IMG/VR virus record: IMGVR_UViG_3300030616_000016
Location: 124,001-188,000 of that record
Length of the DNA stretch: 64,000 nt
Reading direction: 5' to 3' (one strand)
This document shows positions 18,196 to 53,440 of this stretch, in pieces. The stretch's first letter is position 1. Each line of letters opens with the position of its first letter. Both the position numbers and the translations under genes were made by a program. The notes under the pieces were generated by a model. It worked only from the letters and a program-made list of their open reading frames with translations. It was not told where the DNA came from and did not search any database.

Positions 18196-18552
18196 TCATG
18201 CCATATGAGGCTGATTATCCTCAATAAATTTCACCACCTTATCAAAGTCCAATGGTATTTCAGGTCTTCTGAGAGGAATATAATATATTTCCTTTCTCTG
18301 GTTATCAGAAATAACACCATGGGCAATTTCCATGTGACATTCTTTGCACTGGTCTACAATTAAGTCATTGCAAAACCTGCACACGAACCCGAATATGCGG
18401 TCTTTGCAGTGCCTGCACCTGATGTTTAGTGTTGGTAGCCTGTCTGGTAATGTTGACCTCATAACATTCTCCTTCAAATGGGTTAAGTACAAAGACCTTC
18501 CCTGATCTATAAGGGATTGAGACAGGTAAGGTTGGAGCGAGCCCGCGCTCAC
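18196..18552 (-). CDS. Cys-rich zinc-binding protein
   Basis: CRHC, CRFC, CKECH. Confidence 0.6.
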   Translation of the reverse strand: MSAGSLQPYLSQSLIDQGRSLYLTHLKENVMRSTLPDRLPTLNIRCRHCKDRIFGFVCRFCNDLIVDQCKECHMEIAHGVISDNQRKEIYYIPLRRPEIPLDFDKVVKFIEDNQPHMA

Positions 18553-18731
18553 TCCAAACCATCAATACAATCATAGTGAACCCTGTAGTCCACTATGCAC
18601 TGCTCAGACTCTGTGAGCGAGCTCATTCCAAAGAAATCCGCCCGCTCAAACAAATCCCCATACTCCTCACGGATGACGCCTTTGTCATCATCTGAGAGTG
18701 GCTTACTACAAACCGCGCATATGTTATCCAT
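18549..18731 (-). CDS. Small zinc-binding protein
   Basis: CAVC...HYDC; coupled to its neighbours. Confidence 0.55.
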   Translation of the reverse strand: MDNICAVCSKPLSDDDKGVIREEYGDLFERADFFGMSSLTESEQCIVDYRVHYDCIDGLE

Positions 18732-19000
18732 TAGTTATCTCCTTTACAAAGGTTATCTTTGAAGAATTTGTTGAGGACTTCACACGCTTTGTCGAACTTA
18801 TGTGTGGCTTTATCCAGTTCAGCCTGTGCGTAGTCGAGAGCCAGGCTGTACTCGTGCCACACCCAGTAACCCTCAACGTAATCCCGCGCCACTTCCTCAT
18901 CAACACCACACATTGCCACTACTACCTTGGTGGCGGTTTCTGTATCTTCAACCAGCGCCCGGATTATTTCATCAATCTTCGGTTGGTCATGTTCATTCAT
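18731..19000 (-). CDS. Hypothetical protein
   Basis: AAGGAG SD. Confidence 0.65.
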   Translation of the reverse strand: MNEHDQPKIDEIIRALVEDTETATKVVVAMCGVDEEVARDYVEGYWVWHEYSLALDYAQAELDKATHKFDKACEVLNKFFKDNLCKGDN

Positions 19001-19156
19001 TAGATTACTCCTTAAAATATGGTTGTTGTGAACTGGCGCGCCATTTCTTTATTCACGCCATAGGGACTGTCAGTACAATCCCGTAAAAATTACCGTCATA
19101 TACTGTTAGCGTTAAGATTCATTATAAAAAGATATTAGAACGGAGTATACAACAAT

Positions 19157-19233
19157 GCTACGCGTAGTTTGCGTAGCGACCTTTGTCGGTGCGTAGTTTG
19201 CACCGCGAGCCGGCAGATGTAGTTACTGCCGGC
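19157..19233. promoter_or_regulatory. Three adjacent hairpins with different stems and the same GTAGTT loop
   Basis: GCTACGC-GTAGTTT-GCGTAGC; CGGTGC-GTAGTTT-GCACCG; GCCGGCAG-ATGTAGTTA-CTGCCGGC. Confidence 0.65.
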
Positions 19234-19294
19234 GCGGAGTCGGCTTGCTCATTGGTTTACTCTGCTTGGCATTGGAACCGGAGCTTGGGGTAGG

Positions 19295-19453
19295 TTACGG
19301 AGTACCTACCTTGAAATGGGTGGTCATCCCCCGGCACCTTGGGCACCGGGAGACTTCCTTTATGTATATCTTACCGCAATTACTACACAGGGATCCTATC
19401 TTCCCCGCGTTCTCCTTCATATAATCATTAAGCTCATCTCTGAAGGACTTCAT
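19295..19453 (-). CDS. 52-aa zinc-ribbon protein (below ORF-track cutoff)
   Basis: MKSFRDELNDYMKENAGKIGSLCSNCGKIYIKEVSRCPRCRGMTTHFKVGTP*; ATGA-coupled to 19450-20034. Confidence 0.6.
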   Translation of the reverse strand: MKSFRDELNDYMKENAGKIGSLCSNCGKIYIKEVSRCPRCRGMTTHFKVGTP

Positions 19454-20034
19454 TCAGCACCTCCTTCGAAAAGCTGGTGGATCTTCTCGCTTTTTACTCT
19501 CTTGCCTGTGGTACAAGAGAATACAAAGGGCGCGCCATTTATTTCTACCTTAACATAGTGATGCTTGTTAAAGTATTTGGCCACCCTCTTGGTCACTACC
19601 TTGTGCTTGCAGTATGGCAACGATACTCTGTTGCCTTCCTTATCCAGAAGTTTCATGGTATTACCCGCCATCTTATAAAGCAGGTAATACTCTCCATTTA
19701 CCAGCTGGATAACAGGTATCTGTTTATCACCAAGTCTCTCCCGGAACTTGGTGATGCCTTCCCTCTTCTTCCCTCTTGCAAACAACTCTCTAATGCATCT
19801 GCTCGGGTCGTCACCCATGTCTGTTAACTGCTTGCTGACACGCATCTTATCGTCAGCAGTAGGTGCGGCTTGTATGGATTTGATAAATCCACTGCACACC
19901 CCGTGGGGCATACTCATTGCTGAGTATACCCCGTATTCGTTGCTGTGACGGACAAATGCCTTCTGTCTTGACAGGCGACGTATTTCAATGCGAACATTAT
20001 CTATTGTAAGAATCATTTCTTTCTCTCCTTGCAT
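19450..20034 (-). CDS. Basic hypothetical protein immediately downstream of the RNAP-like gene
   Basis: Co-oriented ORF with AAGGAG SD. Confidence 0.65.
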   Translation of the reverse strand: MQGEKEMILTIDNVRIEIRRLSRQKAFVRHSNEYGVYSAMSMPHGVCSGFIKSIQAAPTADDKMRVSKQLTDMGDDPSRCIRELFARGKKREGITKFRERLGDKQIPVIQLVNGEYYLLYKMAGNTMKLLDKEGNRVSLPYCKHKVVTKRVAKYFNKHHYVKVEINGAPFVFSCTTGKRVKSEKIHQLFEGGAE

Positions 20035-20040
20035 AAATGG

Positions 20041-22332
20041 TTAGAGGACGACCTTCTGGCCGACCATATTGAGAACTGCTTCTTCTTTGCTGACATACCA
20101 GCCAGCCTGCTTGCCGTCCTTGTGCAGCTCCACACTGTACCAGTCGGACTTACGATAAATCCGTTCTGGCTTAGCATGCACTTCCAGTTCTACTCCTTGC
20201 AGGTCACTTACTTGACCCTTGAATCCCCTCACGTCAATAAATCCATCAGGCACATAGGACTCATCAACATCAACAGCAAAGCGTGACTGGATATCACCAA
20301 TATACCTACCAAGAATGGTGATAAAGAACGTATTGCGCGTTCTAACTCCTTCATCGTTCCACCATTTCACTTTACCCTTGTCAGGCTTCTCTGACCAGGC
20401 GATGCGCATCATAGACCCGATGACATCGAGAGGGTTGTCCAGCGCTTCAACATAATCCAAGATCTCATCAGTAAGTGCTCTGAACTCATTTCTGATTTCT
20501 TTATCCTTGTCATCCGAAGTTAGCTCAGGGTCTTTCTTGATCTCGATTACATTTCTGATGGTATTGGACCTGGATTCCCATATAAACGCCCAGAGATCTT
20601 CTCCTTCTGGAGTGATATCAAACGCGTTTACATCGAACGGTGGCTTGGCCTCCATGTTTGTATCAGTGTATTTGGCCAGCTCAAGCTCATCCTGAATCTT
20701 GTCGAAGCCATTCAGGAACTTTGTCAGCTTGCATTTCTCAGCCATTTCGTAGGCCAGAAGCTTTTTAGGGAAAACTTCCGGCTTGCCATACTTATCAATC
20801 AATTTGTAGCCATATGCGACCAGATCTTTCTCGTCTTTCGATACTGGTCTGTTATCAATGACCTTGTGTTTGATATAACCAAGATCCTTGATCAACTTTG
20901 GATCGTCAAACCCATTGGTCAAAGACAGGCACTGTTGCACAAGATCAACACCGCCAATTGTGAGACCAGAATGAATGTCGATAAGCTGATGTGCAAGCTC
21001 GCGCAAGGCTTCATTCTTTGGTTTCGACAAGTCGATCTCCAGCTTCATTGGATCTTCATCGTCCAATGTTCTTTCTGGAGTCTGAGAGATATCCTGAGTC
21101 CATGAGAATGGCTTATGTTTATTTCCGTTCTCGTCTATCACAGTTAGGCCCATGACTTCAGAACTAGAGCCTATTGGTACTCTGAATGCCGCAGCTCCAC
21201 ATTCGACATACTCAGGATCGATGCCCCATATTTTCTTGAGCATCTCTGCGTTACGCGCTTTCATCTCCTCTGTGATTACGTGGAGTGTAAGTGTGTCTCC
21301 ATCACAGTCCGATGAAGTCCATCGCTCTATATTATCTATGGTCTTCTTGCTTGCAAGACCAAGGGTATACTTGTGCGTTCCAACAACCAACGCCATAAAG
21401 TCTTTCTTGCATCCTGTGAACTTTATGTTGCGCTCGTCCACCACAATGGTATTTGGCGGCAGGGTCTCATCACATATCATCATACCCTTGATGCCTTTGC
21501 CTTCATGGGCCATAGCAACACCAATCGCCATGATTTCATCATCGGAAGACTCAAGCTTGAGCTCATTTTCTTCTAGAGTCTCAGCGTCTTCTCTCCAGGC
21601 AATTGGATATGATCCGAATGCTGTTGCATACTGATTCTTCTTGTACGGCGCATCCATAAGCCTGTTCATCTCCTTATTGAACTCATAGAAGGCCACTGCG
21701 TCGTCGACTGATATCTCGAATGGGAAATGAGCCAGATTCTTGGCTACCCATTCTGGCGTGAGCCGCATATTGTCTATCTTATGCGCCCACTCGCATGTTG
21801 AAAGAACGTATGCTTTATTGAACTCGTTCTTTGTCTCTGCGGAAAGGTCGCTGCCGTAAATAGCCGTTGGATACTGCATCGGCAGCATAGACTGCTTCTG
21901 CTTATTTAAGGTTGTCCTTGCCGCTTCCTTTTTTACCTTCTTCCATACGTCTTTGCTTCCATGAATCAACCCATCTACGGTTCTAGCAATGATGACGTTG
22001 ATCGTCTTGCTATCCCAGTACGCTAACCTCCTGAGACTTTCATTAAGCATCCAAAGTATCCTTCTAAGATGCTTAACTCTTATGCGACCATCAACCATCG
22101 CCTGAGATGACTCAAACCACTTAGGTTGAGTCTTAAGGCCGAGATTATTATCGGGAACAAGGTCCCATTTGACCATATTCCAGACGATATCGTTAATGAC
22201 TTTTTCTCTGAGGCCTTTTTCTCTGCCTCTACCCACTGTCTTAGTCGACAATGACACAGGGAAATCTGCAGGCATGTCTGTCCTGCCAAGATCTCCTGCA
22301 TAGACTGTTTTGCTGCTTAACTTACACTTCAT
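20041..22332 (-). CDS. Candidate single-subunit two-barrel RNA polymerase (YonO / cellular-RdRP / crAss-like superfamily)
   Basis: GIKGMMICDETLPPNTIVVDERNIKF (K282) resembles the GxKG...I...KF segment of cellular RdRP-like enzymes. SSDCDGDTLTLH (D342-D346, nt 21309-21295) matches the DxDGD Mg-binding loop. Confidence 0.55.
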   Translation of the reverse strand: MKCKLSSKTVYAGDLGRTDMPADFPVSLSTKTVGRGREKGLREKVINDIVWNMVKWDLVPDNNLGLKTQPKWFESSQAMVDGRIRVKHLRRILWMLNESLRRLAYWDSKTINVIIARTVDGLIHGSKDVWKKVKKEAARTTLNKQKQSMLPMQYPTAIYGSDLSAETKNEFNKAYVLSTCEWAHKIDNMRLTPEWVAKNLAHFPFEISVDDAVAFYEFNKEMNRLMDAPYKKNQYATAFGSYPIAWREDAETLEENELKLESSDDEIMAIGVAMAHEGKGIKGMMICDETLPPNTIVVDERNIKFTGCKKDFMALVVGTHKYTLGLASKKTIDNIERWTSSDCDGDTLTLHVITEEMKARNAEMLKKIWGIDPEYVECGAAAFRVPIGSSSEVMGLTVIDENGNKHKPFSWTQDISQTPERTLDDEDPMKLEIDLSKPKNEALRELAHQLIDIHSGLTIGGVDLVQQCLSLTNGFDDPKLIKDLGYIKHKVIDNRPVSKDEKDLVAYGYKLIDKYGKPEVFPKKLLAYEMAEKCKLTKFLNGFDKIQDELELAKYTDTNMEAKPPFDVNAFDITPEGEDLWAFIWESRSNTIRNVIEIKKDPELTSDDKDKEIRNEFRALTDEILDYVEALDNPLDVIGSMMRIAWSEKPDKGKVKWWNDEGVRTRNTFFITILGRYIGDIQSRFAVDVDESYVPDGFIDVRGFKGQVSDLQGVELEVHAKPERIYRKSDWYSVELHKDGKQAGWYVSKEEAVLNMVGQKVVL

Positions 22333-22368: not shown

Positions 22369-22406
22369 GACAGGCTATATAGCGACCACTAACCATATAG
22401 CCTGTC
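22369..22406. other. 12-bp hairpin upstream of the RNAP-like gene
   Basis: GACAGGCTATAT / ATATAGCCTGTC with a 14-nt loop. Confidence 0.7.
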
Positions 22407-22419
22407 ATTGAATTAAGAT

Positions 22420-22722
22420 CTAGCGTCCGAGGCGCTTCCTCAGACTATTGATCTCGTTCTTGGCCTTACCGATGTCCTTGCCGAGATCCTTAATGATCTC
22501 AACGTACTGGTCGATGAACTCCTTGGTCTCTTCGCTATAAACCTCGAAGTTTCTGACAAACTCCTGATGGTGTTTGCGCTCCCTCTGCATCTGGCGCAAG
22601 TCCTTCTCCTTTTTCTGGAGCTCTTCCTCCAACTTGAGCACGGTCTTAGCCATGCTCTGATTTTTGTTATCCATGCTGCTTATGATCGCTTCTTTGAACT
22701 GAGCCATGTCTCCCAATTTCAT
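22420..22722 (-). CDS. Coiled-coil protein (start MKLGDM)
   Basis: GGAGAG SD; heptads. Confidence 0.65.
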   Translation of the reverse strand: MKLGDMAQFKEAIISSMDNKNQSMAKTVLKLEEELQKKEKDLRQMQRERKHHQEFVRNFEVYSEETKEFIDQYVEIIKDLGKDIGKAKNEINSLRKRLGR

Positions 22723-22846
22723 ATCTAACTCTCCTTCTGCCCTATTGGGCAATAGCGTATATAGAAGGCCCTATATAGGCCCTTGCCTATATAAGGGGTA
22801 GTACATATACGCCCTATGTACTACCTGTTTACACTGCATATAAGGT

Positions 22847-23002
22847 CTACCTATTAGACCTTGTTGTATAAGTACCCACATTACCCTTAATAAGGGCTTC
22901 TACACCATACCCAATAGTGTCGGACTTACGCGCATAGTGTTTATTGAGCACGCGCATATTGTGCTCATCAACAATCCTCTTAATCTGTTCTGCTCTACTC
23001 AT
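22847..23002 (-). CDS. 51-aa protein (below ORF-track cutoff)
   Basis: MSRAEQIKRIVDEHNMRVLNKHYARKSDTIGYGVEALIKGNVGTYTTRSNR*; AAGGAG SD. Confidence 0.55.
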   Translation of the reverse strand: MSRAEQIKRIVDEHNMRVLNKHYARKSDTIGYGVEALIKGNVGTYTTRSNR

Positions 23003-23341: not shown

Positions 23342-23516
23342 ATCACACCTCCATATAAGCACTATTAATATATACTAATGAGCAACACACCCATTAGTAC
23401 TGATGATACAGTGCTATATATCACCATTCACTATATAGACCGCCTTATATAAGGAAGCCTATATAGTAAAGGTATACTATTTATATATGCGCCATATACC
23501 AGGGCGCTCATACATA

Positions 23517-23846
23517 TCACATATACACTGTTGTTTCTGGTTTATTGTGCTTGGTAAATTCATTCATCCCACCAAGCACCCTCCTTATCTGTCTGTTTGT
23601 ACCATTGCTAATCACCAGGTATACATATGACTCATGGTAGAAATCACCGTCGTAATCGTCAATAATTCTTACCTTGTACTCAACTACACGCCCGTTGCAC
23701 CATATACATCTCTGATACACATGTTCCAAGGAAGGTATATCTCTTACTACATCACCAACCACCAACCCCGTGGAGCTGTCAAAAAACTTACCTTCTACTG
23801 CTACATTGTTGCTATCTTTCACTGCATTAAGATTTGTGATCAACAT
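23517..23846 (-). CDS. Hypothetical protein, first gene of the leftward unit
   Basis: AGGAG SD. Confidence 0.6.
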   Translation of the reverse strand: MLITNLNAVKDSNNVAVEGKFFDSSTGLVVGDVVRDIPSLEHVYQRCIWCNGRVVEYKVRIIDDYDGDFYHESYVYLVISNGTNRQIRRVLGGMNEFTKHNKPETTVYM

Positions 23847-23956
23847 AATGATCTCCTTTGCCCATCGGGCTAAAAGTTTTTATTTTCTTTCTCTATAAGC
23901 ACCCCGGTACCGTGCATCGACCAATGCACATCATAAGTACCGAGAAATATCAACCA

Positions 23957-24062
23957 TCATCCACCCTTGTGTCTTACAAATCTTCCACCCTTAAGACCTT
24001 ATATTTTCTTCCACTCTTGTGTTTCATGAATTATCCACCCTTGAAAATTATATATATAATAT
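23957..24062. repeat. Four 12-bp direct repeats resembling DnaA boxes/iterons, followed by an AT tract
   Basis: TCATCCACCCTT 23957, TCTTCCACCCTT 23981, TCTTCCACTCTT 24007, TTATCCACCCTT 24031, then AAAATTATATATATAATAT. Confidence 0.8.
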
Positions 24063-24329
24063 GCACATAGTGCTGCTGCAGCGTGTCAACAAGAGCTTGA
24101 CGGCAAGCCCGCCCCTCTTAAAAATAACACTCCAAGACGCCGCCGCCCCATTACATAAAAATGCAACCTAGTAGCTGAGCTACTGTTCATCATAGATAAA
24201 CTTCAAGAAAGACCCCCCGGTACCGCATATATACACTCCCGCATAACAACCTATTCATGCCCCCAAAAATATATATAATATACACTTCACACTCCCTGAG
24301 TGTTATTCTTGAATATTTTATTATTACAA

Positions 24330-31775: not shown

Positions 31776-34700
31776 GTGCAGATTGAAAGACCCGACCCCT
31801 ATTCTTCGGATATGTGTAAAGAATGCAAAGCGATGTACAGAAAGCTGTATGATGAAGGTAAGATAAAGAACCCATTTCCTCCTTTGTGTCGTGGAGATAG
31901 AAGACTACAAGAAGGATATATATGTGATGGCATGTCTCCTCAAGAGAAAGCCTTAGCTGTTTTATCTAATCCTTCTACATGGGCTAAATATGAACTCAAC
32001 ATAGCACCCAGGTGGTATCAGGAGACCATGCTCGCATGCTCTGCCAGACAGACAGTACTGCGATGCGGTAGACGTATAGGAAAGAGTTTTATGTTGGTAT
32101 TAAGAGCTCTTCACAACATGTCTAGAAATAAACACTATCGCGTTCTTATTGTTGCTCCATACCAGAACCAAATCAATATTCTTTTTGGTTTTATAGACAA
32201 GTTTATTTCTGATTCTAAAACCATAAAGAACAAAGTTAAAAGAAGGGTTAAATCTCCTCAACTTCTTGAATTAACCAATGGCTCATTGATACAAGGCTTT
32301 CCATCAGGTATTAACTCTGGCGGTAAGAGTGATAAGGTTCGTGGTCAAGATGCCGATGAGATTCTTATTGACGAGATTGACTATCTGCCAGACGGAGATA
32401 TCGACGCTATTGTTGCTATTCTGGCTTCAAATAAAAACACCAAGATATCAGTTTCATCTACTCCTAGTGGTAGAAAAACCAAGTATTATAAATTCTGCAC
32501 TCACAAGCAAGACGGATGGAAAGAATGGCACTTCTCTTCCATGGTTTCTCCAGAGTGGACAGAGCAGACCGAGAACATGCTACGAGGTATGTATTCAACT
32601 CTGGCATGGGAACACGAAATATGTTTGAGCGGCGATACTTTAGTAAGAACTACGCTTGCAGATAAAAAAATAAAAGACATTACCTGCGAAGATTTTGTAT
32701 ATGATAGTAACTTTAATATAGTCGAAGTTGCTAAGGGCGCCACTTATACTGGTAGGAAACAAGTTGTGAAATACACTTTACCCAATGACAGACATATAGT
32801 TTCTACACCAGACCATAGCTTTCCTAATAGGAGTTTTACCAAAACACCCATTGAAAGCCTTGATGAATTACCAGTGTATAGAGATAAAAGATATAATTCG
32901 TCTGACAGAGATGTGGTTTTAGCTAGACTTGTTGGGTACAACTTGGGCGATGGATCTTGTTGTTCGACTAGATATCAGTCAAGTTTCTACTCATCATCTT
33001 ATTCTGATATGGACAAAATAGTTAAAGACTTACATACTATTTATCCTGGCTATAAAGGGAACGTTTTGGAAGATGTTATTAATAACTCAAACAAAAAAGC
33101 CTCACTAGTTCATGTCGACGGCAAAAGATGCTCTGTTAATGTTAGTAAAAAAATTACATTGGATTTAATAAGTCATGGCGTCGTAAGAGGTAAAAAGGTA
33201 GAACAAGAATTTAATATACCAGATTTTATTGCAAGTTCCAATGATTTAGAGGTTAAGAGAGAATTTATTGCTGCTTTGTTTGGAGCGGAAGGATCTATGC
33301 CAGCTAAGGCATGCGACGACGGATATATGCCGCACACTTTATCTTTATCTATGTCTAAGCGGCGTGGGGTGTCTGCAGATGTGTTTTTTGATGGGTTGGT
33401 GAGTATATTAAAAGAATTTGGCGTAAGATCTACATGGACTTCGCATCCAGCACAATTCAAATCTGCTAATAATGGTATATGTCATAACACTGTCTATGCG
33501 CTTTATGTTCATAATAGCTTTGATAATATTTATGCTTTTTTGAATAAGGTAGGCTATAGATATTGCGATGCAAAAGAACAAGCTGCGTTTAATATTAAAT
33601 GCTATCTTGAGTGCTATGATTATGCCTTAAAAGCCAAGAGGAATCGATTTGAGTATGCTCGAATATTAAAAGATAAGAAGTTGAGTCATAAAGAAATAAG
33701 CAAGAGAACGCGCTTAAGTCTTGCGCAAATCAGCAAAGCTATTGCGGGTCGCATTCCAAAGAGATTTTATAATGAATTTCCCAAATTGGATGACTGGCTG
33801 AAGTATAATGTCGTTGGCTCCGGTGTATTCATGCCAATAGTAAAACGCAGAAAATTACCTAAGCCTATTGATGTATACAATATAACAGTTGGATCACACG
33901 ACCATTCATACATATTGGGGAACGATACAAGGACTTTTAATTGCGCAGAATTTGGCCAGTTTGAAGAAGGTGCCTTTCCAACCAAAAAGCTTGTTGAAAG
34001 CATGCAGTCTTATACATATGCTCAATGTTCCAGGAAGCCAAATTGCATTTATTCAATGGGCGTTGACTGGAATGAGCATCCAATTGGCGTTCATATGGTT
34101 GTTGTTGAATATGATCCTGAATATGGCCAGTTTAAAGTTGTAGACAAAAAGATATCTAACGACAAGGAATTTACTCAAACTAAAGCAGTAGAAGACATCA
34201 TTACAACATATAGAACGTGGATGCCAGATTGGCTATGGGCTGATGCCGGCGCCGGTGGATATCAAATTGAAACTTTGAAGAGAGTTGCAAACGCTAAACC
34301 TGATCTTAGATTAAGAAAGAAGATACGTGGTGTGGTTATGCATGAGAAAGAGATAATCAAAGATCCTATAACAAAGCGTGATGTAAAGAAACAGGCGAAG
34401 GCATTGATGGTTGATTTATGTGTGCGACGAGTAGAGATTGGTCAGTGTATATTTCCAAGAATTGAAGATGATGAAAACATGTTAGTAGACCAAATCAGAA
34501 ACTTCAAGGTAGAGAGGTTTACTCCTAATGGTATTCCTGTCTACTCTCAGGGCAAAGACCATACTGCAGTTGCATGGATGGTCGCTATGTATGCCATACT
34601 TCTTAATCGCACGGATATTAAGAATGTCAAACATTGCAAGAATGTTGGTTCTGTTCCAATATACAATTCCATTACAGGAGCATCGACCACAACAAGATCC

Positions 34701-34877
34701 AGATCAATATCAAATGAGATTATAGGCTCAAGAGAAATTAAGACCAAACAGGATGTTCAGATAGAGAGTTTTCGTAAAGTATCGCAACCACAAAGAAGAA
34801 AGCACGTAGCTCATATTGAATTAAGACGCGGCGTTGTTTCATCAAAGCGTGCTATCGCAAACAGATCAAGGATATAA
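31776..34877 (+). CDS. terL: Terminase large subunit (with intein)
   Basis: Walker A CGRRIGKS, Walker B ILIDEID, SSTPSG, nuclease MGVDWN and GKDH; spliced length 593 aa. Confidence 0.95.
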   Translation: MQIERPDPYSSDMCKECKAMYRKLYDEGKIKNPFPPLCRGDRRLQEGYICDGMSPQEKALAVLSNPSTWAKYELNIAPRWYQETMLACSARQTVLRCGRRIGKSFMLVLRALHNMSRNKHYRVLIVAPYQNQINILFGFIDKFISDSKTIKNKVKRRVKSPQLLELTNGSLIQGFPSGINSGGKSDKVRGQDADEILIDEIDYLPDGDIDAIVAILASNKNTKISVSSTPSGRKTKYYKFCTHKQDGWKEWHFSSMVSPEWTEQTENMLRGMYSTLAWEHEICLSGDTLVRTTLADKKIKDITCEDFVYDSNFNIVEVAKGATYTGRKQVVKYTLPNDRHIVSTPDHSFPNRSFTKTPIESLDELPVYRDKRYNSSDRDVVLARLVGYNLGDGSCCSTRYQSSFYSSSYSDMDKIVKDLHTIYPGYKGNVLEDVINNSNKKASLVHVDGKRCSVNVSKKITLDLISHGVVRGKKVEQEFNIPDFIASSNDLEVKREFIAALFGAEGSMPAKACDDGYMPHTLSLSMSKRRGVSADVFFDGLVSILKEFGVRSTWTSHPAQFKSANNGICHNTVYALYVHNSFDNIYAFLNKVGYRYCDAKEQAAFNIKCYLECYDYALKAKRNRFEYARILKDKKLSHKEISKRTRLSLAQISKAIAGRIPKRFYNEFPKLDDWLKYNVVGSGVFMPIVKRRKLPKPIDVYNITVGSHDHSYILGNDTRTFNCAEFGQFEEGAFPTKKLVESMQSYTYAQCSRKPNCIYSMGVDWNEHPIGVHMVVVEYDPEYGQFKVVDKKISNDKEFTQTKAVEDIITTYRTWMPDWLWADAGAGGYQIETLKRVANAKPDLRLRKKIRGVVMHEKEIIKDPITKRDVKKQAKALMVDLCVRRVEIGQCIFPRIEDDENMLVDQIRNFKVERFTPNGIPVYSQGKDHTAVAWMVAMYAILLNRTDIKNVKHCKNVGSVPIYNSITGASTTTRSRSISNEIIGSREIKTKQDVQIESFRKVSQPQRRKHVAHIELRRGVVSSKRAIANRSRI
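32622..33941 (+). mobile_element. 440-aa intein with LAGLIDADG endonuclease in TerL
   Basis: HEI|CLSGDT, block B STPDH, LVGYNLGDGS and FIAALFGAEGS, ends TRTFN|C. Confidence 0.9.
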
Positions 34878-34878
34878 T

Positions 34879-37323
34879 ATGGCAGATATTAATAGGAAAC
34901 CAAAATTACAATATAAGAAAGAGCGTTCTGTTTCACCTTTTGCTGGTTATGGTGCTGATCCAGATGGCAAGGCCGAGACACCAGGTCAAAGCCAATATAA
35001 AGATGCAAGATTTGCAAAGCCGGCTGCTGGTGCAATACCTGAGGATCAAGATCCTAGACGCGCTGCCGATGAAGTGTTTCTGAATCTTGCAGGTGTCAAA
35101 GCAAAGACAGACTTTCTTATCGATGCAATAGATAATAACAATAGAGTTTTATCTATTCCTGTGTATGAAGACTCTGATGAAGTGCGTGAAGCAGTTGCAA
35201 GGAAAGATCCTCAAAACTCCCCGACTGGAGATAAAATATTTTGGGATCTATTTAAGCGTGCCATAAGAGACGCTGCTCATCAGTTTGATGGCATAACTCT
35301 TGATGTTATTGACAATCTTACAGGTGAGCCTTTTGCAGATAATAGAATCATAAATGGCAATATGCGACTATGGAATGACTCTACCATATCTCAAGTAGAT
35401 ATTGATTTCAATACTTCTAACGGAACAAGCACATCAGCCATAAGAGATAGAATCCGCAAAGAAGTTAAAGACAATGGACCAAGCATCCTTGAAAGATTAC
35501 TTGTTCAGGGAGGAACATTGGCTTTTGCTTTCTTTCTTCATAAGATAATGCATACAGAAGATGCTCCAGATAAGGCCGCTGTAGCTGCTCCTAAAATGCC
35601 TTCTGGAACTGAGCTAGGCCCTATGATAGCACAAATAGTTCTTGGTTTTGCAATGCAAATGCTTCTTAATAATCTTGCTGAACAAGATGCTAGAAGGATA
35701 ATGCGCGATTCATATGTCCTTCCAGCAGAGGCTGGAGTTGGTATAGATTCTATTGTTTCCCAGGCCGCTCAGCTGGTTAACCAAGCCAAGCAAAGCCCCA
35801 ATCCATATCAATCCCTAGCAAATCATCCAGCCATGCATGCAAGCGCCCCTTTTATTGAATTAGCATTGGACAGAATGGGCGAGGGCGACTATGAAATCAT
35901 AAGAGACTATTCTATACAGTGGCTTGCCACACATAATGAAGAAGGTTATGATGAGTGGCTAGCATACATTGACTTATATGATATATCATCAGATATCGAC
36001 AAGTCATTAGATATAGCCCCGCAATATTCTCCAGTATTTAGAGAGCATGCCAGAAAGGCTGGTAAAAGAAATATATCTGTACCTGCTATCAAGAAAGCCA
36101 AGTCTCATTATGCCAGCCGCAATGTCACAAGCCCTCCATCTTTACAAGTTGGTACATCCGCGCGCTATTCCTTTGCTGATATGACCAATGGTGATAACTA
36201 TGATGATTATGCACAAGAGATGGTAGGATTTATACAGGAAGATTTTCTAGACTCGCTTAGCTTCCAAGCATGTACATATAACAGAGCTACTAATAGACTT
36301 GCTGCTTTTATTACAGCTAATCCTTTTGTAGCAGATTTAGTTTGCTGTTTTGTTAGATTTATGGGTAGTGTGGATCCAGCAATACTACGCTCAATCCGCT
36401 CTCTCGTATCATTATTTGCCAATGGCATTAGCTTTGATCTTGGCGGCTTCCTTGCCAAGCTCCATAAAAGAGCTTGGGGTGACATGCAGCAGTCTGCGGC
36501 TTATGAGCTGCTTGGCCTTATAGATGAAATGTTTTACACAATCATCAATAGAATACTTGATTGGGCAGACAACATAGACGAAAGAATGCTTGTATGTCTA
36601 CCTATAGACGCAATGTTAAACATGACGATGAAGGGCATCGAAGATCTTCGCAATCAGTTTAAAGACCTGCTTATGACTTTGCTTGATAAGATTAAAACCA
36701 AAGGCTATACTTTTGACAAGAAGATATCCATTCTTACAGAACGTAAATGGGCAAGAAAGCTGTTAAAGATAATCGACGCAGTTATTTATGCCTTGCAGTC
36801 TGGTAAGATGTGTCATGCTGAAGAAAGGGTCTACAGCGTTGCGGTTAATAACTTTGTGAATGAGATCCTACAGGAAGATTCAACGCCTTCTAATTTGCAT
36901 CAGTATATTCGAACTGGTCTTGGTTTGGATGATCTACCTGCAGGAGACGACTCTTTATCTATTAATAGAGACGAAAAGCAAAGCCCTTCCAATCCTGAAG
37001 AGAACACTGGTTCGCCCTCATTTGAATCTGCCCAAGCTACTAGAGCAGCATCTAGACTAGACTCACTTAATGTATATGGCGAGCCTTTGGATGTTGACTC
37101 AAGTATAGTAGGAAGAAATTCTTTTAATACTTTTGATGACGATCAGCCATTAATTACAGAGAATGGTATTGACTTACCTTCTTTTATGGATATAATTAGA
37201 GACAAGAGTACCTGGGACTCAAGTCTTTCTGCTGAACAGAAACAAAGCTGTATTGATAAAATGACCGATGCAGAAATACAGAAATTTAAGCAAATCATGA
37301 ATAAATTTAGGAGCAGCAGATGA
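34879..37323 (+). CDS. Large helical protein between terminase and portal (probable virion protein)
   Basis: ATG 34879 directly follows the TerL stop; ATGA-coupled to the portal. Confidence 0.6.
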   Translation: MADINRKPKLQYKKERSVSPFAGYGADPDGKAETPGQSQYKDARFAKPAAGAIPEDQDPRRAADEVFLNLAGVKAKTDFLIDAIDNNNRVLSIPVYEDSDEVREAVARKDPQNSPTGDKIFWDLFKRAIRDAAHQFDGITLDVIDNLTGEPFADNRIINGNMRLWNDSTISQVDIDFNTSNGTSTSAIRDRIRKEVKDNGPSILERLLVQGGTLAFAFFLHKIMHTEDAPDKAAVAAPKMPSGTELGPMIAQIVLGFAMQMLLNNLAEQDARRIMRDSYVLPAEAGVGIDSIVSQAAQLVNQAKQSPNPYQSLANHPAMHASAPFIELALDRMGEGDYEIIRDYSIQWLATHNEEGYDEWLAYIDLYDISSDIDKSLDIAPQYSPVFREHARKAGKRNISVPAIKKAKSHYASRNVTSPPSLQVGTSARYSFADMTNGDNYDDYAQEMVGFIQEDFLDSLSFQACTYNRATNRLAAFITANPFVADLVCCFVRFMGSVDPAILRSIRSLVSLFANGISFDLGGFLAKLHKRAWGDMQQSAAYELLGLIDEMFYTIINRILDWADNIDERMLVCLPIDAMLNMTMKGIEDLRNQFKDLLMTLLDKIKTKGYTFDKKISILTERKWARKLLKIIDAVIYALQSGKMCHAEERVYSVAVNNFVNEILQEDSTPSNLHQYIRTGLGLDDLPAGDDSLSINRDEKQSPSNPEENTGSPSFESAQATRAASRLDSLNVYGEPLDVDSSIVGRNSFNTFDDDQPLITENGIDLPSFMDIIRDKSTWDSSLSAEQKQSCIDKMTDAEIQKFKQIMNKFRSSR

Positions 37324-40316
37324 GTGCGTTCGGTAATATGCGTAAATACATATCAAACATCATAAGCCCAGAAGTTCCTCCTTCCCAGCCTAAGCCAGAG
37401 AAAAAAGTTCCTCCAAGGATGCAACTGGTACATCTCAAGGTCAACAACAGAATCAGAAACAGCATGAAGGAGATTGGTAGCAGAAGTGTTAGTGATGGTT
37501 GGGCGGATGATCCGATATATGATTTCGAAGAAATTAGAAGGGCAGAAGATAAGGAATCTTTCCTAGCTATATCTTTTAGAAAACATATTGAAATGGTTGT
37601 CAAACGAGGCTGGACAATAAGAGGAAAGAACCAGGATTTTATTCAACACGTAAGAGAAAGGCTTTGGGAGATCTTTATTCTTACCGGCGTATCCACAAAA
37701 GGTATCATCAGAGATGTAGTCAAAGATATAGTAAGGTTCTCTAACGCATATATCATATTCAAAAGATCAGACAACTTTCCAATTAAAGGTCGTCCATACA
37801 AATGGCGTGGCCAAAGACTGAAACCAATAGTAGGCATGTTCAGAGCTGATCCAGCTAATATGAAGCCAGTTTTTAGAACTAGAAGTGGAAGAAAACAGCT
37901 TGTTGCATGGAAGCATTGCAGAGATGAAAGTAACTTTGGTGCAAAGTCACAAATATTTAAAAAAGATGATGTTATGCATATCAAGTGGACTGATAAAGGT
38001 CTTCTTATAGGCACGCCATTCGCCATTCCAGTTCTCGATGATATTAGAGCACTCAGAAGAGTAGAAGAATTCATAGAAATGCTTTGTTCGAAACACGCGT
38101 TTCCACTTATACATTATAAAGTAGGTACAGATAATGCACCAGCTGAGGTATATGAAGACGGCAGTGGTAGAACTGAAATTGATGATGTTAAGGATGATGT
38201 TGAGGCAATGCCAACAGAAGGTTGCTGGGTAACATCCGAGAGACATTCTATAGCCGCTATTGATGATACAGAAGGTGTAGATCTTGAGAAGTATTTAAAG
38301 CACTTCGAAGATAGAGTTATTTCTGGATGTGGTATGTCTGGCATTTCATTAGGTCGTGGTGGATCGGCGAACAGATCTTGCTATTCTGAAGACACACAAA
38401 CACTTACAGATTCTGGATGGAAATATTATTGGCAGGTTACTAGTTATGACAAGATAGCTACATTCAACCCAAATACTGGAAAGATAGAATATCATTATCC
38501 AGTAGGCGGATTAAAATTATACGATTACGAAGGTGATATGTATAATTTTAAAGGTAAGCATGTAGATGCTTGTGTCACACCTGATCATGATATGTGGGTT
38601 GGGTATCCTAAGTTAGACGGAACAAAATCTTGGGAGAAGGTACATGCGGACAGCATAAAAACAGACCAGTTTTACTTTCAGGCGACTGCAGATTGGTCTG
38701 GAGTAGAACCAGAAGATTTTAGATTGCCACACGTTTCGTATACAAGCAGACACGACTGTTTCGAGAACAAGGGACCATTTGACAGAATCAATGCAGCAGA
38801 CTGGTTTGAATTTCTTGGATATTGGGTATCCGAAGGTACTTTGGCCAAGGTACCTAACAAATACGCGCTATCTATATCGCAGAACTGTGTTGTCAATGAG
38901 AACAAAACACAAAAGATCAGAAAGTGTCTAGAAAGACTTCCGTTCAAGTTTAATGAATATACGGATCCAAAAGATAATACTACAAGATTTTGGATAAATT
39001 GTAAATCTCTTTTCTTATATTTGCAAGATGAATGTGGCACATATTCCTATAGCAAAAAATTCCCTGAATATGTACTGTCCGCAGATGCTACACATATTAA
39101 AATAGCATTTGAAGCTGCCATGCTAGGAGATGGTACTTCCGACAAAAGACAAGGAAGAACTTCTCGTGCTTATTATTCTACCTCAGACGTCTTGATCGAC
39201 CAAATACAAGAGATGGCCCTGAAGCTTGGTATAAGAGCCCATATTCTGCCTGGCAGTGGATGTAAAAGAGTTGTTATGTCTGAATATAAGCAAAACAAGA
39301 TCACTAAAGACAACATAGATATAGTAAAATATTCAGGTAAGGTTTATTGCTTCCACGTACCAAACCATCTTTTTGTAACCAGAAGAAATGGTAAAATTGG
39401 TATACACGGTAATACCGCAACAGTTATTGACAAAATTCTTATAGACAGAGCCTGGGACATTCAGGATGTTATTAGCGACGCGCTTGATACGTATCTATTA
39501 CTACACTTCCATTTAGATAGCGGTAAGCCTTTTGGTCCTGATGATATGGCCCACTTTAAATTCTATGCTCCTGACACAGAAGAAGAAAGAGCTAATGAAA
39601 ATCATTATCTCAACCAGTATCAAAGCGGTGCAATAACTGAAGAAGAGCTAAGAGAAGATATCAACAGACCTCCTCTAACAGAGAAGCAGCGTAGCCAGCT
39701 ATACTCAGAGAATACAGCTGTCTATACGCAGGAGCGCTATGCTCAGCTTGCTAAGAAGTATGGATATATGCATACATTTCCAGGCGTCAAGACTGCTCAG
39801 GCTGGAGCAGCTGGTGGTACAACCGCCAAAAAGGCCGCTAATAAGACAAGAAACAAAACACAGCCGACAAATCAATCAGGAACAAAAGCAACAAAAACAA
39901 GAGTTGCAGTTAACAATATTAAAGCAGAAATAAGAAATCTCAAACATACCTTTGTAAATCTTTCTGAAGAAAAATTTGATATTAATTTGCCTATGGCAAA
40001 ATCCTTTATTTTGAATAGCTTTGATAGGTTTATAAGTATCTTTAATCAAACCATTTACAACGATATGTCTATGCTCGCAGATGAGCTTAAAGACATAGGA
40101 TTAAGAGCAAGAATTTCTGACTGTTCAAATAAAGTTGAAGAAAAGTTCTTGAAATCGTTATATGATTCGATTATAATTAGACTTAGCGACGGCGAGGTAG
40201 ATCCCGTTGCCTTGTTCGATGGCCTGAGCAATGACTTAATCAGTTTATTAGATAAACTGCCTAGTATATATGACGAGTTTAAAACAGTTAGTGAAGAGGG
40301 AGACCAAAATGAGTGA
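37320..40316 (+). CDS. Portal protein (with intein)
   Basis: FSNAY, IGTPFAIPVLDDIRALRRVEE, FPLIHYKVG, FEDRVISGCGMSGISLGRGGSANR; position between TerL and protease. Confidence 0.85.
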   Translation: MSAFGNMRKYISNIISPEVPPSQPKPEKKVPPRMQLVHLKVNNRIRNSMKEIGSRSVSDGWADDPIYDFEEIRRAEDKESFLAISFRKHIEMVVKRGWTIRGKNQDFIQHVRERLWEIFILTGVSTKGIIRDVVKDIVRFSNAYIIFKRSDNFPIKGRPYKWRGQRLKPIVGMFRADPANMKPVFRTRSGRKQLVAWKHCRDESNFGAKSQIFKKDDVMHIKWTDKGLLIGTPFAIPVLDDIRALRRVEEFIEMLCSKHAFPLIHYKVGTDNAPAEVYEDGSGRTEIDDVKDDVEAMPTEGCWVTSERHSIAAIDDTEGVDLEKYLKHFEDRVISGCGMSGISLGRGGSANRSCYSEDTQTLTDSGWKYYWQVTSYDKIATFNPNTGKIEYHYPVGGLKLYDYEGDMYNFKGKHVDACVTPDHDMWVGYPKLDGTKSWEKVHADSIKTDQFYFQATADWSGVEPEDFRLPHVSYTSRHDCFENKGPFDRINAADWFEFLGYWVSEGTLAKVPNKYALSISQNCVVNENKTQKIRKCLERLPFKFNEYTDPKDNTTRFWINCKSLFLYLQDECGTYSYSKKFPEYVLSADATHIKIAFEAAMLGDGTSDKRQGRTSRAYYSTSDVLIDQIQEMALKLGIRAHILPGSGCKRVVMSEYKQNKITKDNIDIVKYSGKVYCFHVPNHLFVTRRNGKIGIHGNTATVIDKILIDRAWDIQDVISDALDTYLLLHFHLDSGKPFGPDDMAHFKFYAPDTEEERANENHYLNQYQSGAITEEELREDINRPPLTEKQRSQLYSENTAVYTQERYAQLAKKYGYMHTFPGVKTAQAGAAGGTTAKKAANKTRNKTQPTNQSGTKATKTRVAVNNIKAEIRNLKHTFVNLSEEKFDINLPMAKSFILNSFDRFISIFNQTIYNDMSMLADELKDIGLRARISDCSNKVEEKFLKSLYDSIIIRLSDGEVDPVALFDGLSNDLISLLDKLPSIYDEFKTVSEEGDQNE
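38379..39413 (+). mobile_element. 345-aa intein with LAGLIDADG-like domain in the portal
   Basis: NRS|CYSEDT, VTPDH, FLGYWVSEG and AMLGDG, VYCFHVPNHLFVTRRNGKIGIHGN|T. Confidence 0.9.
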
Positions 40317-52675: not shown

Positions 52676-53440
52676 ATGGGAGAATTATGCGAGGCCTATC
52701 TAGGTCCAGAATATCTTCCAGGTCCTCTTATATCGGGTGAATATTTAAAAGGTGAGGTGGCAGAAGATCCAATTTTGTCACCTCATCTTGCACCTTATAT
52801 CGCCGCTCTATTAAAGAAGTACGACGATATATTTCATGTTAAGTATAATGATCAGGATTTTATAATCCGGCCATTGACTTCAAATGAATATAAGATACTG
52901 TGTAAGCTTAGGTTATACTTCGATCCTCAATTAGGGTTCGAAAAGACAAGGCCTAGGTTTAGTGTTGTAAGCCTAGAAGATATATTTATAGACTGTATTC
53001 TTTATCCTGAGAATGTACTTGATATGGATTTAGATGCATATGTTGTTGATATGCTTATAGAGACTGCAATACAATATTCGGGATGGGATTCACAGGAGGA
53101 TATATTTGTAACAAAAGCTCAAATGCAAGCTCATGTAACATCAGATCTATTAGAGGGCATGTTTACATTTATTAGACGAGCACACCCAGGTCTTGGTGAT
53201 CGCGATCTTGAAAACAAGAATATTATTGATATAATGAAGTTAATAGCAAGTGCTGAATTGATATTGGATAAGCCATTCGAGATAGTCACCAAAGATGATA
53301 AATCAGATGCTTCTAAAATATCAACCGAAGTTATGATCAAAGAAGACTTGGCAGGTCTTAATAAGCTTAATATGCAAGGCTTAAATAAGCCGGAGCTAGA
53401 ATATGCCCGTAACGCCCAGAGAAGAACAGGAAAGAAGTAG
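52676..53440 (+). CDS. Second tail assembly chaperone
   Basis: KKYDDIF...FIIRPLT...CILYP...LIETAIQYSGW, a similar pattern; has its own GAGGA SD. Confidence 0.65.
   Translation: MGELCEAYLGPEYLPGPLISGEYLKGEVAEDPILSPHLAPYIAALLKKYDDIFHVKYNDQDFIIRPLTSNEYKILCKLRLYFDPQLGFEKTRPRFSVVSLEDIFIDCILYPENVLDMDLDAYVVDMLIETAIQYSGWDSQEDIFVTKAQMQAHVTSDLLEGMFTFIRRAHPGLGDRDLENKNIIDIMKLIASAELILDKPFEIVTKDDKSDASKISTEVMIKEDLAGLNKLNMQGLNKPELEYARNAQRRTGKK

What the first reader, a model, noticed from the sequence alone, without database searches (positions are those of the whole stretch)
19157..19233. Three consecutive hairpins with unrelated stems but identical GTAGTT loops
Seen: stems of 7, 6 and 8 bp differ completely in sequence while the loop core GTAGTT(T) (AAACTAC on the coding strand) is kept. 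They lie in a non-coding gap two genes downstream of the RNAP-like gene, and CGGAG recurs at 19141, 19235, 19279, 19298. Known: N4 virion RNAP recognises hairpin promoters by their loop; RNA-binding regulators often read fixed loops. Inference: a triple recognition site (hairpin promoter, antitermination box or processing site).
Basis: partly seen in the sequence, partly recalled or inferred. Interest (0 to 1): 0.6.

Follow-up and report, generated by a model that had tools for sequence, protein, structure and literature searches.

The report
Three hairpins sharing one loop motif
A jumbo phage from marine sediment carries, at one place only, three strong stem-loops with unrelated stems and the same loop letters, most likely an RNA platform that shows one short motif three times to a binding factor; what it does is inferred, not shown.

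Summary
Window 19157-19233 holds three perfect hairpins with stems of 7, 6 and 8 bp. Their loops are GTAGTTT, GTAGTTT and ATGTAGTTA on the + strand, which is AAACUAC or UAACUACAU on the gene-sense minus strand. It is the only such triple cluster in the 231,647-bp genome, and no further hairpin with this loop occurs anywhere else in it. A general promoter class is therefore excluded, and the N4-type hairpin promoter fails its defining features.

The cluster lies in a 294-nt gap after a three-gene block: a 763-aa orphan protein with a DxDGD motif, a 194-aa orphan, and a 52-aa zinc-ribbon protein. It is bracketed by CGGAGT boxes (ACUCCG in gene sense). That box also clusters in intergenic DNA downstream of the only two known homologues of the 763-aa protein, in two related phage lineages. 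Those lineages lack the GTAGTT loops.

Best reading (confidence 0.35): a lineage-specific structured RNA module on the gene-sense transcript, at the boundary between the early genes and the genes downstream, that displays one loop motif three times to a sequence-specific binder. Rival readings are terminator or stability hairpins, DNA hairpin signals for a phage polymerase, and a separate small RNA. No transcript data and no variant sequence could be obtained.

The parts
19157..19177 (-). Hairpin H1: 7-bp perfect stem, 7-nt loop AAACUAC in gene sense (GTAGTTT on +). It is the last of the three in the direction of transcription and is followed by a U-rich stretch.
   Evidence: -11.8 kcal/mol as RNA. 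Flagged terminator-like on the minus strand.
19187..19205 (-). Hairpin H2: 6-bp perfect stem, loop AAACUAC. Shares an 11-nt core with H1 (loop plus closing GC pairs).
   Evidence: -10.2 kcal/mol.
19209..19233 (-). Hairpin H3: 8-bp perfect stem, 9-nt loop UAACUACAU. The stem can extend to 19206-19236 with one bulge on each side.
   Evidence: -17.6 kcal/mol.
19289..19310 (-). Hairpin H4: 7-bp stem with an 8-nt loop that holds an ACUCCG box. It overlaps the stop codon of the zinc-ribbon ORF.
   Evidence: -10.4 kcal/mol.
19247..19284 (-). Weaker predicted stem-loop between H4 and H3. It contains the variant box GCUCCG (19279-19283 on +).
   Evidence: present in both MFE and centroid. Prediction only.
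19235..19240 (-). ACUCCG box (CGGAGT on +) directly 5' of H3 in gene sense. An 11-nt stretch around it is identical to the first box of relative L144.
19141..19146 (-). ACUCCG box (CGGAGT on +) 10 nt 3' of H1 in gene sense, at the start of the AT-rich spacer.
19001..19140 (-). AT-rich spacer between the hairpin module and the next gene. It has a TATAAT-like hexamer and ends in the AAGGAG ribosome site of the 89-aa gene. In a second strain, 19001-19061 is replaced by 30 other letters while the run still covers the hairpin region.
19295..19453 (-). 52-aa zinc-ribbon protein (CxxC...CxxC). Its start overlaps the stop of the 194-aa gene by 4 nt. A homologue at 50% identity lies directly upstream of the DxDGD gene in relative L142.
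19450..20034 (-). 194-aa basic orphan protein with no family and no homologue.
20041..22332 (-). 763-aa orphan protein with an invariant D-x-D-x-D (DCDGD) motif. It is a candidate polymerase-like protein. Only two distant homologues exist among 1.8 billion representative proteins.
   Evidence: Failed model.
18731..19000 (-). 89-aa gene, the first gene downstream of the module, with a strong ribosome-binding site.

Best explanation
The three hairpins form a lineage-specific structured RNA module, about 170 nt long (19140-19310), on the gene-sense (minus-strand) transcript. H4 and the ACUCCG boxes belong to the same module. It lies in the 294-nt gap between the block DxDGD protein / 194-aa protein / zinc-ribbon protein and the next gene.

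The module presents the same loop (AAACUAC, or UAACUACAU in H3) three times on stems that only need to pair. That is the design of a multivalent docking site for a sequence-specific RNA-binding factor, a dimer or oligomer or several cooperating copies.

Binding would set what happens at this gene boundary: read-through versus termination at H1, or stability and translation of the downstream message.

- Shown: the structure, its uniqueness, the compensatory pattern, the gene context, and the conserved ACUCCG boxes in relatives.
- Inferred: that the active form is RNA, that the strand is the gene-sense one, that a protein reads the loops, and the regulatory outcome. The adjacent zinc-ribbon and 194-aa proteins are only positional candidates for that protein.
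For: - Three perfect GC-rich hairpins have one shared loop hexamer, and 5 of 7 aligned stem pairs changed on both sides. Selection therefore acts on pairing and on loop letters, not on stem sequence.
- The loops stay open in every fold, and each hairpin is stable alone.
- The module is unique in 231 kb, which fits a single-locus regulatory site and not a repeated signal.
- All neighbouring genes are on the minus strand, in tight or overlapping order. The gene-sense strand is therefore expected to be transcribed through the gap, if read-through from the upstream genes is assumed.
- The gap is unusually long for this genome, and the whole module folds far better than shuffles (z -4.6; z -4.0 for 316 nt).
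- In relative L144 the gap in the same position, right after the homologous gene, is also strongly structured (three hairpins, z -4.8).
- All three lineages carry clusters of ACTCCG there. In this genome ACTCCG is rare on that strand, and three of nine copies lie here.
- The hairpin style changes at this point. The early region upstream uses AT-rich palindromes of the CTATATAG type; this module is GC-rich.
Against: - There is no transcript evidence of any kind. No RNA run holds the sequence.
- There is no strand information. All stem pairs are Watson-Crick, so DNA hairpins on either strand fit equally well.
- The loop motif is not conserved in the two related lineages. All accessible copies of this locus are 100% identical, so there is no orthologous covariation; the covariation is among paralogues within one genome.
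- No binding protein is identified. The zinc-ribbon protein matches only generic zinc-ribbon profiles below their cut-offs.
- In L142 the zinc-ribbon gene is not next to any such hairpins.
- No Rfam family matches.
Confidence: 0.35

Rival explanations
1. The hairpins are transcript-end hairpins: a stack of terminator or 3'-end-protecting stem-loops that closes the early transcription unit before a new promoter in the AT-rich spacer. The shared loop would be a leftover of local duplication rather than a recognised motif.
For: - H1 is flagged terminator-like, followed by a stretch with 5 U in 8.
- The module sits at the end of a tightly packed gene block and before an AT-rich spacer with a TATAAT-like hexamer.
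- Other gene ends in the early region also carry hairpins without clear U tracts.
- H1 and H2 share an 11-nt core, as expected after a duplication.
Against: - H2 and H3 have no U tract.
- If the copies arose by duplication, every stem position beyond the closing pairs has since been replaced in a compensatory way while the loop hexamer stayed intact. That is the opposite of what a terminator requires.
- The scan found no sigma-70-like promoter on the minus strand in the spacer.
Confidence: 0.2
2. The hairpins are DNA signals. Extruded or transiently single-stranded hairpins would show the loop motif to a phage-encoded polymerase, either the 763-aa DxDGD protein or the multisubunit RNAP. They would act as a locus-specific promoter, terminator or pause cluster, with the ACTCCG boxes as part of the signal.
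For: - The module lies two genes downstream of the DxDGD gene.
- ACTCCG boxes cluster downstream of that gene in all three lineages.
- SPbeta YonO starts its single late operon from one start site upstream of yonK, with the promoter sequence still undefined (PMC5467207); that this site lies a few genes downstream of yonO is from my own knowledge of the SPbeta map, not from the paper. This gives a precedent for a one-promoter polymerase.
- The AR9 jumbo-phage non-virion RNAP reads a short template-strand motif and works on single-stranded DNA (PMC7598289).
- The genome encodes a multisubunit RNAP beta-like protein.
- The DNA fold is as significant as the RNA fold.
Against: - The polymerase nature of the 763-aa protein is unproven.
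- Three initiation sites 26-29 nt apart would overlap one another.
- The loops are not shared by the relatives, while the polymerase-like gene is.
- Stems of 6-8 bp extrude poorly without special sequences (own knowledge, in line with PMC4496689).
- The loop does not match the AR9 consensus when aligned by hand.
Confidence: 0.15
3. The gap encodes a separate small RNA of about 150-200 nt, ending at H1. It would act in trans, either as a sponge or decoy that titrates a host or phage hairpin-loop-binding protein through its three identical loops, or as a loop-loop (kissing) antisense regulator.
For: - The architecture matches sponge RNAs: several hairpins, unrelated stems, one loop motif.
- It is one compact unit with a terminator-like 3' hairpin.
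- A solitary CRISPR-repeat-like element lies 640 nt further on in another small gap. This hints that the neighbourhood may hold RNA genes.
Against: - No promoter was found upstream of H4, which lies inside the zinc-ribbon ORF.
- The complement of the loop motif is not enriched in the genome.
- No RNA data exist.
- This reading overlaps the best explanation and differs only in cis versus trans action.
Confidence: 0.15
4. The hairpins are a single-strand initiation or replication-origin signal: hairpins on the displaced strand recognised by a primase or initiator, next to an AT-rich unwinding region.
For: - GC-rich hairpins sit next to a 140-nt AT-rich stretch.
- The site occurs once per genome.
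- Three-hairpin priming signals exist in small phages (own knowledge: the G4-type complementary-strand origin).
Against: - There are no replication genes nearby. All neighbours are orphans.
- No skew change is centred here; the cumulative GC-skew minimum follows the strand switch at 22-26 kb.
- No iteron-like regular spacing is present.
Confidence: 0.05

Closest known systems
Csr/Rsm-type sponge RNAs and multi-site leaders (RsmZ, RsmY, CsrB)
   Same: Several stem-loops with unrelated stems each display one short fixed motif in the loop, which gives multivalent binding of one protein.
   Different: The defining loop motif of that family is GGA (ANGGA). H1-H3 carry AAACUAC or GUAGUUU and no GGA. 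No CsrA-like gene was seen nearby. Here there are three sites in an intercistronic gap, not a free-standing sRNA gene with its own promoter.
Coliphage N4 virion-RNAP hairpin promoters (P1-P3)
   Same: There are three hairpins in a phage genome in which part of the stem may vary as long as it pairs, and loop bases are read. The reading requires single-stranded presentation.
   Different: N4 has a 5-7 bp stem with a 3-nt loop, conserved stem bases and a conserved -17 to +1 region. The promoters are separate, at the genome end, and are read by a giant T7-like polymerase (PMC4496689). Here the loops are 7-9 nt, the stems are unrelated, the spacing is 26-29 nt, and the site lies inside a same-strand gene run.
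Lambdoid nut sites (boxA + boxB) and HK022 put RNAs
   Same: These are cis-acting RNA hairpins in an early transcript, downstream of early genes. They are read through loop bases and change the fate of the transcribing polymerase.
   Different: boxB is a 5-bp stem with a GNRA-like pentaloop preceded by boxA, and it occurs once per operon. No boxA-like sequence is visible in 19001-19330. The loop size and the triple arrangement also differ.
Phage Mu Com / mom leader
   Same: A very small zinc-finger protein is encoded immediately upstream of an RNA hairpin region that precedes the next gene. Com binds the RNA and opens translation (own knowledge).
   Different: There is one binding site rather than three identical loops. 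No sequence similarity was tested or seen, and any link between the zinc-ribbon protein and the hairpins here rests on position only.
SPbeta YonO and its single late promoter
   Same: A stand-alone protein with a DxDGD-type motif has its one known start site a few genes downstream of its own gene, next to an unannotated non-coding RNA (start site and ncRNA: PMC5467207; the position relative to yonO is from my own knowledge).
   Different: Homology of the 763-aa protein to YonO is not established. PF05183 finds nothing in this genome. The YonO promoter sequence is unknown, so no comparison of signals is possible.

Membership tests
N4-type hairpin promoter | 5-7 bp stem closed by a 3-nt loop with a central purine | tested here: not met
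   The stems are 6-8 bp, but the loops are 7, 7 and 9 nt. Family definition from PMC4496689.
N4-type hairpin promoter | Conserved bases within the stem and a conserved -17 to +1 block shared by all copies | tested here: not met
   Only the loop hexamer is shared by all three, plus two closing pairs between H1 and H2. Five of 7 stem pairs differ on both sides.
N4-type hairpin promoter | A T7-like (single-subunit, PF00940) virion RNA polymerase encoded by the phage | tested here: inconclusive
   PF00940 gave no match in the genome, but it also rang in none of the control genomes, so the search is uninformative. The large ORFs 53403-58841 and 58841-64000 have no PHROG match.
Phage promoter class (any polymerase) | The signal recurs upstream of many transcription units of the genome | tested here: not met
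   No other hairpin carries this loop in 231,647 bp, by strict or relaxed scan.
Intrinsic (Rho-independent) terminator | GC-rich stem-loop followed directly by a U tract | tested here: inconclusive
   H1 passes a lenient scan (5 T in 8). H2 and H3 are followed by GC-rich or mixed sequence.
Csr/Rsm sponge or leader | GGA (ANGGA) motif in the hairpin loops | tested here: not met
   The loops of H1-H3 hold no GGA on either strand. GGA occurs only on the + strand, in the CGGAG boxes and the H4 loop.
Lambdoid nut site | boxA followed by a boxB hairpin with a 5-nt GNRA-like loop | tested here: not met
   The loops are 7-9 nt. No boxA-like sequence was seen on reading 19001-19330 on the minus strand.
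CRISPR repeat, mini-array or RNA anti-CRISPR | Direct repeats with the same stem sequence, matching a repeat family | tested here: not met
   The stems are unrelated. No Rfam CRISPR-DR hit lies on 19140-19310. The phage's own type I-E repeat has a different hairpin with a 4-nt loop.
Type III antitoxin RNA (ToxI-like) | Tandem, near-identical direct repeats of about 34-45 nt next to an endoribonuclease toxin gene | tested here: not met
   The units are 29 and 26 nt apart and share only 6-11 nt. No toxin family is present among the neighbours. The padloc library was not searched.
tRNA or tRNA-like | Cloverleaf detectable by ARAGORN or Rfam | tested here: not met
   There are no tRNA or tmRNA genes in the window and no Rfam hit. 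The phage's 21 tRNAs lie elsewhere in the genome.
Two-barrel RNA polymerase (YonO / RdRP PF05183 type), for the neighbouring 763-aa protein | DxDGD metal-binding loop within a double-psi beta-barrel fold | tested here: inconclusive
   Three Asp residues are invariant across the three known members, and language-model neighbours are RdRP-named (0.89). The fold could not be tested: pLDDT 35 and Atlas model 0.43. There is no profile or PDB match.

The most novel reading that the evidence does not exclude
The ACTCCG boxes and the loop-display hairpins together are the cis signals (start, stop or switch site) of a previously unrecognised family of stand-alone DxDGD polymerase-like proteins. This family occurs in a small group of marine-sediment jumbo phages that also carry a multisubunit RNAP. 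The polymerase-like protein, with its conserved zinc-ribbon partner, would act at a single site just downstream of its own gene, as YonO does in SPbeta. The hairpin loops would be the lineage-specific recognition element.
Probability: 0.1. Interest if true: 0.8.

Novelty: new variant of a known kind. Interest (0 to 1): 0.42.

Why it matters
If the loops are read by a protein, this would be a new loop code (AAACUAC) and a compact natural example of multivalent hairpin display in a jumbo phage. It sits at the boundary where the style of regulatory signals changes.

It is also tied by position to an orphan DxDGD protein family with only three known members, and to a short box (ACTCCG) conserved across them. 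That gives a concrete and cheap entry point for asking what that protein does: binding and transcription assays on a template of about 200 nt.

If the hairpins are only terminator or stability structures, the finding is ordinary.

Tried and rejected
- **Chance:** rejected.
- **General promoter or repeated signal:** rejected, because the site is unique in the genome.
- **Known RNA families:** none matched. There are no tRNAs in the window.
- **Close relatives through the neighbouring genes:** the 763-aa and 194-aa proteins gave nothing in IMG/VR or in the word-index protein search. Megablast against the phage collection gave nothing, and tblastn gave only a chance hit.
- **Pattern scans:**
  - Two copies of the 11-nt core in IMG/VR gave two unrelated tandem repeats.
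Among the loci returned, only tandem repeats or chance matches were seen, so absence elsewhere is not shown.
- **Other copies of the locus:** all were identical, so there was no variation to read. The one variant contig (ENA, 7180 bp) has no DNA on hand.
- **Laid contigs:** a second strain covers the hairpins and replaces 19001-19061. No difference is listed at 19157-19233, but 75 rows were not shown.
- **RNA runs:** none hold the sequence.
- **Structure of the 763-aa protein:** the model failed (pLDDT 35), so no fold search was run.
- **Further relatives:**
  - Through the 279-aa structural protein: one more lineage, but without synteny on the early side.
  - Through the shared 14-mer of the early region: 120 chance hits, none related.
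- **Extending the L142 contig:** failed.
- **ACTCCG at genome position 97633:** it looked like the fourth box here but lies inside a coding frame.
- **AR9 late-promoter consensus:** the loop does not fit it when aligned by hand (consensus).
- **k-mer search for a promoter consensus upstream of genes:** nothing clear emerged.

Full report
**What the window is.** The window is bases 124001-188000 of a 231,647-bp IMG/VR virus record, judged 95% complete. Two marine-sediment metagenome runs hold it.
- It is a tailed jumbo phage. Tail sheath, major head protein, portal, head maturation protease and large terminase lie on the + strand between 31.8 and 49.3 kb.
- Genes from about 23.9 kb downwards are on the minus strand.
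- Elsewhere the genome encodes a multisubunit-RNAP beta-like protein (PF00562, E 6e-15) and a weak beta'-like match.

**The observation.** The three hairpins are exactly as described.
- H1 is 19157-19177 (7 bp), H2 is 19187-19205 (6 bp), and H3 is 19209-19233 (8 bp). The stems are perfect and GC-rich.
- The loops are GTAGTTT, GTAGTTT and ATGTAGTTA on the + strand.
- They form in folds of the region as minus-strand RNA (z -4.60) and as + strand DNA (z -4.18). Each is stable alone (-11.8, -10.2 and -17.6 kcal/mol).
- The hexamer is not enriched in the window (24 copies against 26.6 expected), but the arrangement is far from chance. It is the only triple cluster of GC-rich perfect hairpins in the genome, with none in 20 shuffles. 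It is the only place where a stem of 5 bp or more encloses this hexamer on that strand. A relaxed scan finds nothing above shuffle level.
- Treated as three paralogues, 5 of 7 aligned pairs differ on both sides yet pair, while the loop hexamer is invariant.
- The CGGAG recurrence is also significant. There are 40 copies on the + strand of the whole genome, four of them within about 160 nt here, and three of the nine CGGAGT copies lie here.
- A fourth hairpin at 19289-19310 carries one of these boxes in its loop and overlaps the stop codon of a 52-aa ORF.

**Context.** In the direction of transcription (minus strand) the order is:
- A 763-aa protein (20041-22332).
- A 194-aa protein (19450-20034).
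- A 52-aa zinc-ribbon protein (19295-19453), whose start overlaps the preceding stop.
- The 294-nt gap, containing H4, a weaker stem-loop, a box, H3, H2, H1, another box, and about 140 nt of AT-rich DNA.
- An 89-aa gene with an AAGGAG ribosome site.

None of the flanking proteins has a Pfam or PHROG family, apart from generic zinc-ribbon matches below cut-off.

The 763-aa protein contains DCDGD. An exhaustive HMMER search of 1.8 billion representatives found only two relatives (E 6e-15 and 4e-9). The three Asp residues are invariant in their alignment. Language-model neighbours are clusters named RdRP/PF05183 at 0.89, which the tool itself rates as a lead only. Sequence searches against Pfam and PDB, the PF05183 genome search and an AlphaFold model (pLDDT 35) gave nothing. 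'RNAP-like' is therefore a hypothesis, not a result.

**Relatives.** The contigs of the two relatives could be read.
- *L142/L143* is a true relative of this phage. Its structural proteins are 60-67% identical, it has the same divergent layout, and it has a zinc-ribbon homologue (50%) directly upstream of its DxDGD gene.
- *L144/L145* keeps synteny on the downstream side, with homologues of the genes at 17350, 14430 and 13907.
- Neither lineage has GTAGTT-loop hairpins.
- Both have clusters of ACTCCG, the gene-sense form of CGGAGT, in the non-coding DNA just downstream of the DxDGD gene. L144 has three in its two gaps, and one of them shares an 11-nt stretch with the box next to H3. L142 has two in the last 70 nt of the contig.
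- The L144 gap is again strongly structured, with three hairpins (z -4.8).
- The L142 contig then breaks in short TAACACTAC-type repeats. They loosely resemble the loop motif here, but the contig could not be extended.

The conserved feature of this position is therefore the short box plus strong local structure. The triple loop motif is a lineage-specific elaboration.

**Signals change at this point.** The early region upstream (22.3-24.4 kb) has AT-rich blocks of TATATTATATATA type, a CGGTACCGGGG motif shared with L142, and many palindromes built around CTATATAG after gene ends. The module after the zinc-ribbon gene is GC-rich and uses different motifs. This fits a boundary between two expression regimes, although no promoter consensus could be extracted.

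**Strain data.**
- Three accessible copies of the locus are identical.
- A second strain, in run X2 and in an ENA contig, has a gap of 263 nt instead of 294 nt. It replaces 19001-19061 with 30 other letters, and the run still covers the hairpin region.
Conservation of the loops between strains is therefore likely but not shown.

**Mechanism.** The pattern of stems free to change as long as they pair, with loop letters fixed and present three times, argues for a hairpin read through its loop by a sequence-specific factor. Such a factor would be oligomeric or cooperative.
- Every neighbouring gene is on the minus strand and no clear terminator precedes the module. The simplest carrier is therefore the gene-sense RNA, on which the loops read AAACUAC.
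- I therefore favour a cis-acting RNA platform that decides read-through, stability or translation at this boundary (0.35).
- The rivals are plain terminator or stability hairpins with a duplicated loop (0.2), DNA hairpin signals for a phage polymerase (0.15), a separate trans-acting small RNA (0.15), and a priming or origin signal (0.05).
- The data cannot separate RNA from DNA or one strand from the other, because all pairs are Watson-Crick.

**Comparison with known systems.**
- The N4 promoter model fails on loop size, stem conservation, spacing and copy distribution (for the definition).
- The module works most like Csr/Rsm-type multi-hairpin sites in design, but it lacks their GGA motif.
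- nut/boxB, CRISPR-repeat, ToxI-type and tRNA-like memberships were each tested and not met.
- The SPbeta YonO precedent has one start site upstream of yonK, next to an unannotated non-coding RNA (PMC5467207); that this lies a few genes downstream of yonO is from my own knowledge of the SPbeta map. It is the closest positional analogue if the DxDGD protein is a polymerase.

**Verdict.** This is a real, unique, non-random structured element of unknown function in an orphan region of an uncultured jumbo phage. It is a new variant of the general kind 'loop-display hairpin array'. Interest is moderate, and would rise sharply if the link to the DxDGD protein family were confirmed.

Noticed in passing
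G000:C1:13760-22900 (outside the window; locus L270 7760-16900): The phage carries a complete type I-E CRISPR-Cas interference set, with no adaptation genes seen among the ORFs scanned: Cas3, Cse1, Cse2, Cas6e, Cas7 and Cas5, all above the Pfam cut-offs. Three arrays with a 61-nt period and a 28-nt repeat accompany it, with 8, 12 and 6 repeats. The same repeat core occurs in arrays of SAR324, Deltaproteobacteria and Desulfobacteraceae MAGs and of some Firmicutes MAGs. This is a weak host clue.
   Followed up: partly
window 18487-18523 (minus strand): A solitary 37-nt CRISPR-repeat-like element lies in a small gap between two genes. It aligns over the full length of Rfam CRISPR-DR54 at 25.7 bits (E 0.038), below the gathering score. 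It is unique in the genome and unlike the phage's own I-E repeat. Contigs of the second strain break exactly at 18478 and 18524. It may be a solitary repeat unit of the RNA anti-CRISPR type. A 20-mer from it had no exact match in 185,579 genomes.
   Followed up: partly
window 23900-24300 and L142 3800-4210: The divergent early control region holds two copies of a CGGTACCGGGG motif and AT-rich blocks of TATATTATATATA type. Both are shared with relative L142. They resemble the AT-rich early-promoter motifs described for jumbo phages with their own RNAPs.
   Followed up: no
window 22380-22440, 22740-22860, 23400-23520: Many palindromes built around CTATATAG or CCTTATATAAGG follow the small early genes. 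L142 has the same style, including hairpins with GATATAA in the loop at L142 4576, 4639 and 7234.
   Followed up: no
window 31776-34877 and 37320-40316; L270 2382-4547: The terminase (1033 aa) and the portal (998 aa, with a LAGLIDADG match at residues 602-645) are over-long, and a radical-SAM protein also carries a LAGLIDADG domain. Inteins or inserted homing endonucleases are likely.
   Followed up: no
G000:C1:104709-107058 (outside the window): A multisubunit RNA polymerase beta-like ORF (PF00562, E 6e-15) and a weak beta'-like match lie here. The phage therefore has at least one cellular-type RNAP besides the DxDGD orphan.
   Followed up: no
G000:C1:23384-35625 (outside the window): A cluster of 21 tRNA genes lies on the minus strand. 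No Thr, Asp, Phe or Trp tRNA is among them.
   Followed up: no
window 19001-19061: In run X2 this stretch, just upstream of the 89-aa gene, is replaced by 30 unrelated letters that keep a ribosome-binding site. The same strain has a 91-aa product in place of the 89-aa one and different genes further downstream.
   Followed up: partly
L142 8560-8594 (contig end): Directly after its two ACTCCG boxes the contig of the related phage ends in short TAACACTAC-type repeats, which loosely resemble the loop motif of the finding. The assembly broke there in two runs.
   Followed up: partly
window 18196-18731: A run of small cysteine-rich (CxxC-type) proteins follows the module. One is the 60-aa product at 18549-18731, which has a 35% homologue in L142. 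Another is an ORF starting at 18462 with several CxxC pairs.
   Followed up: no
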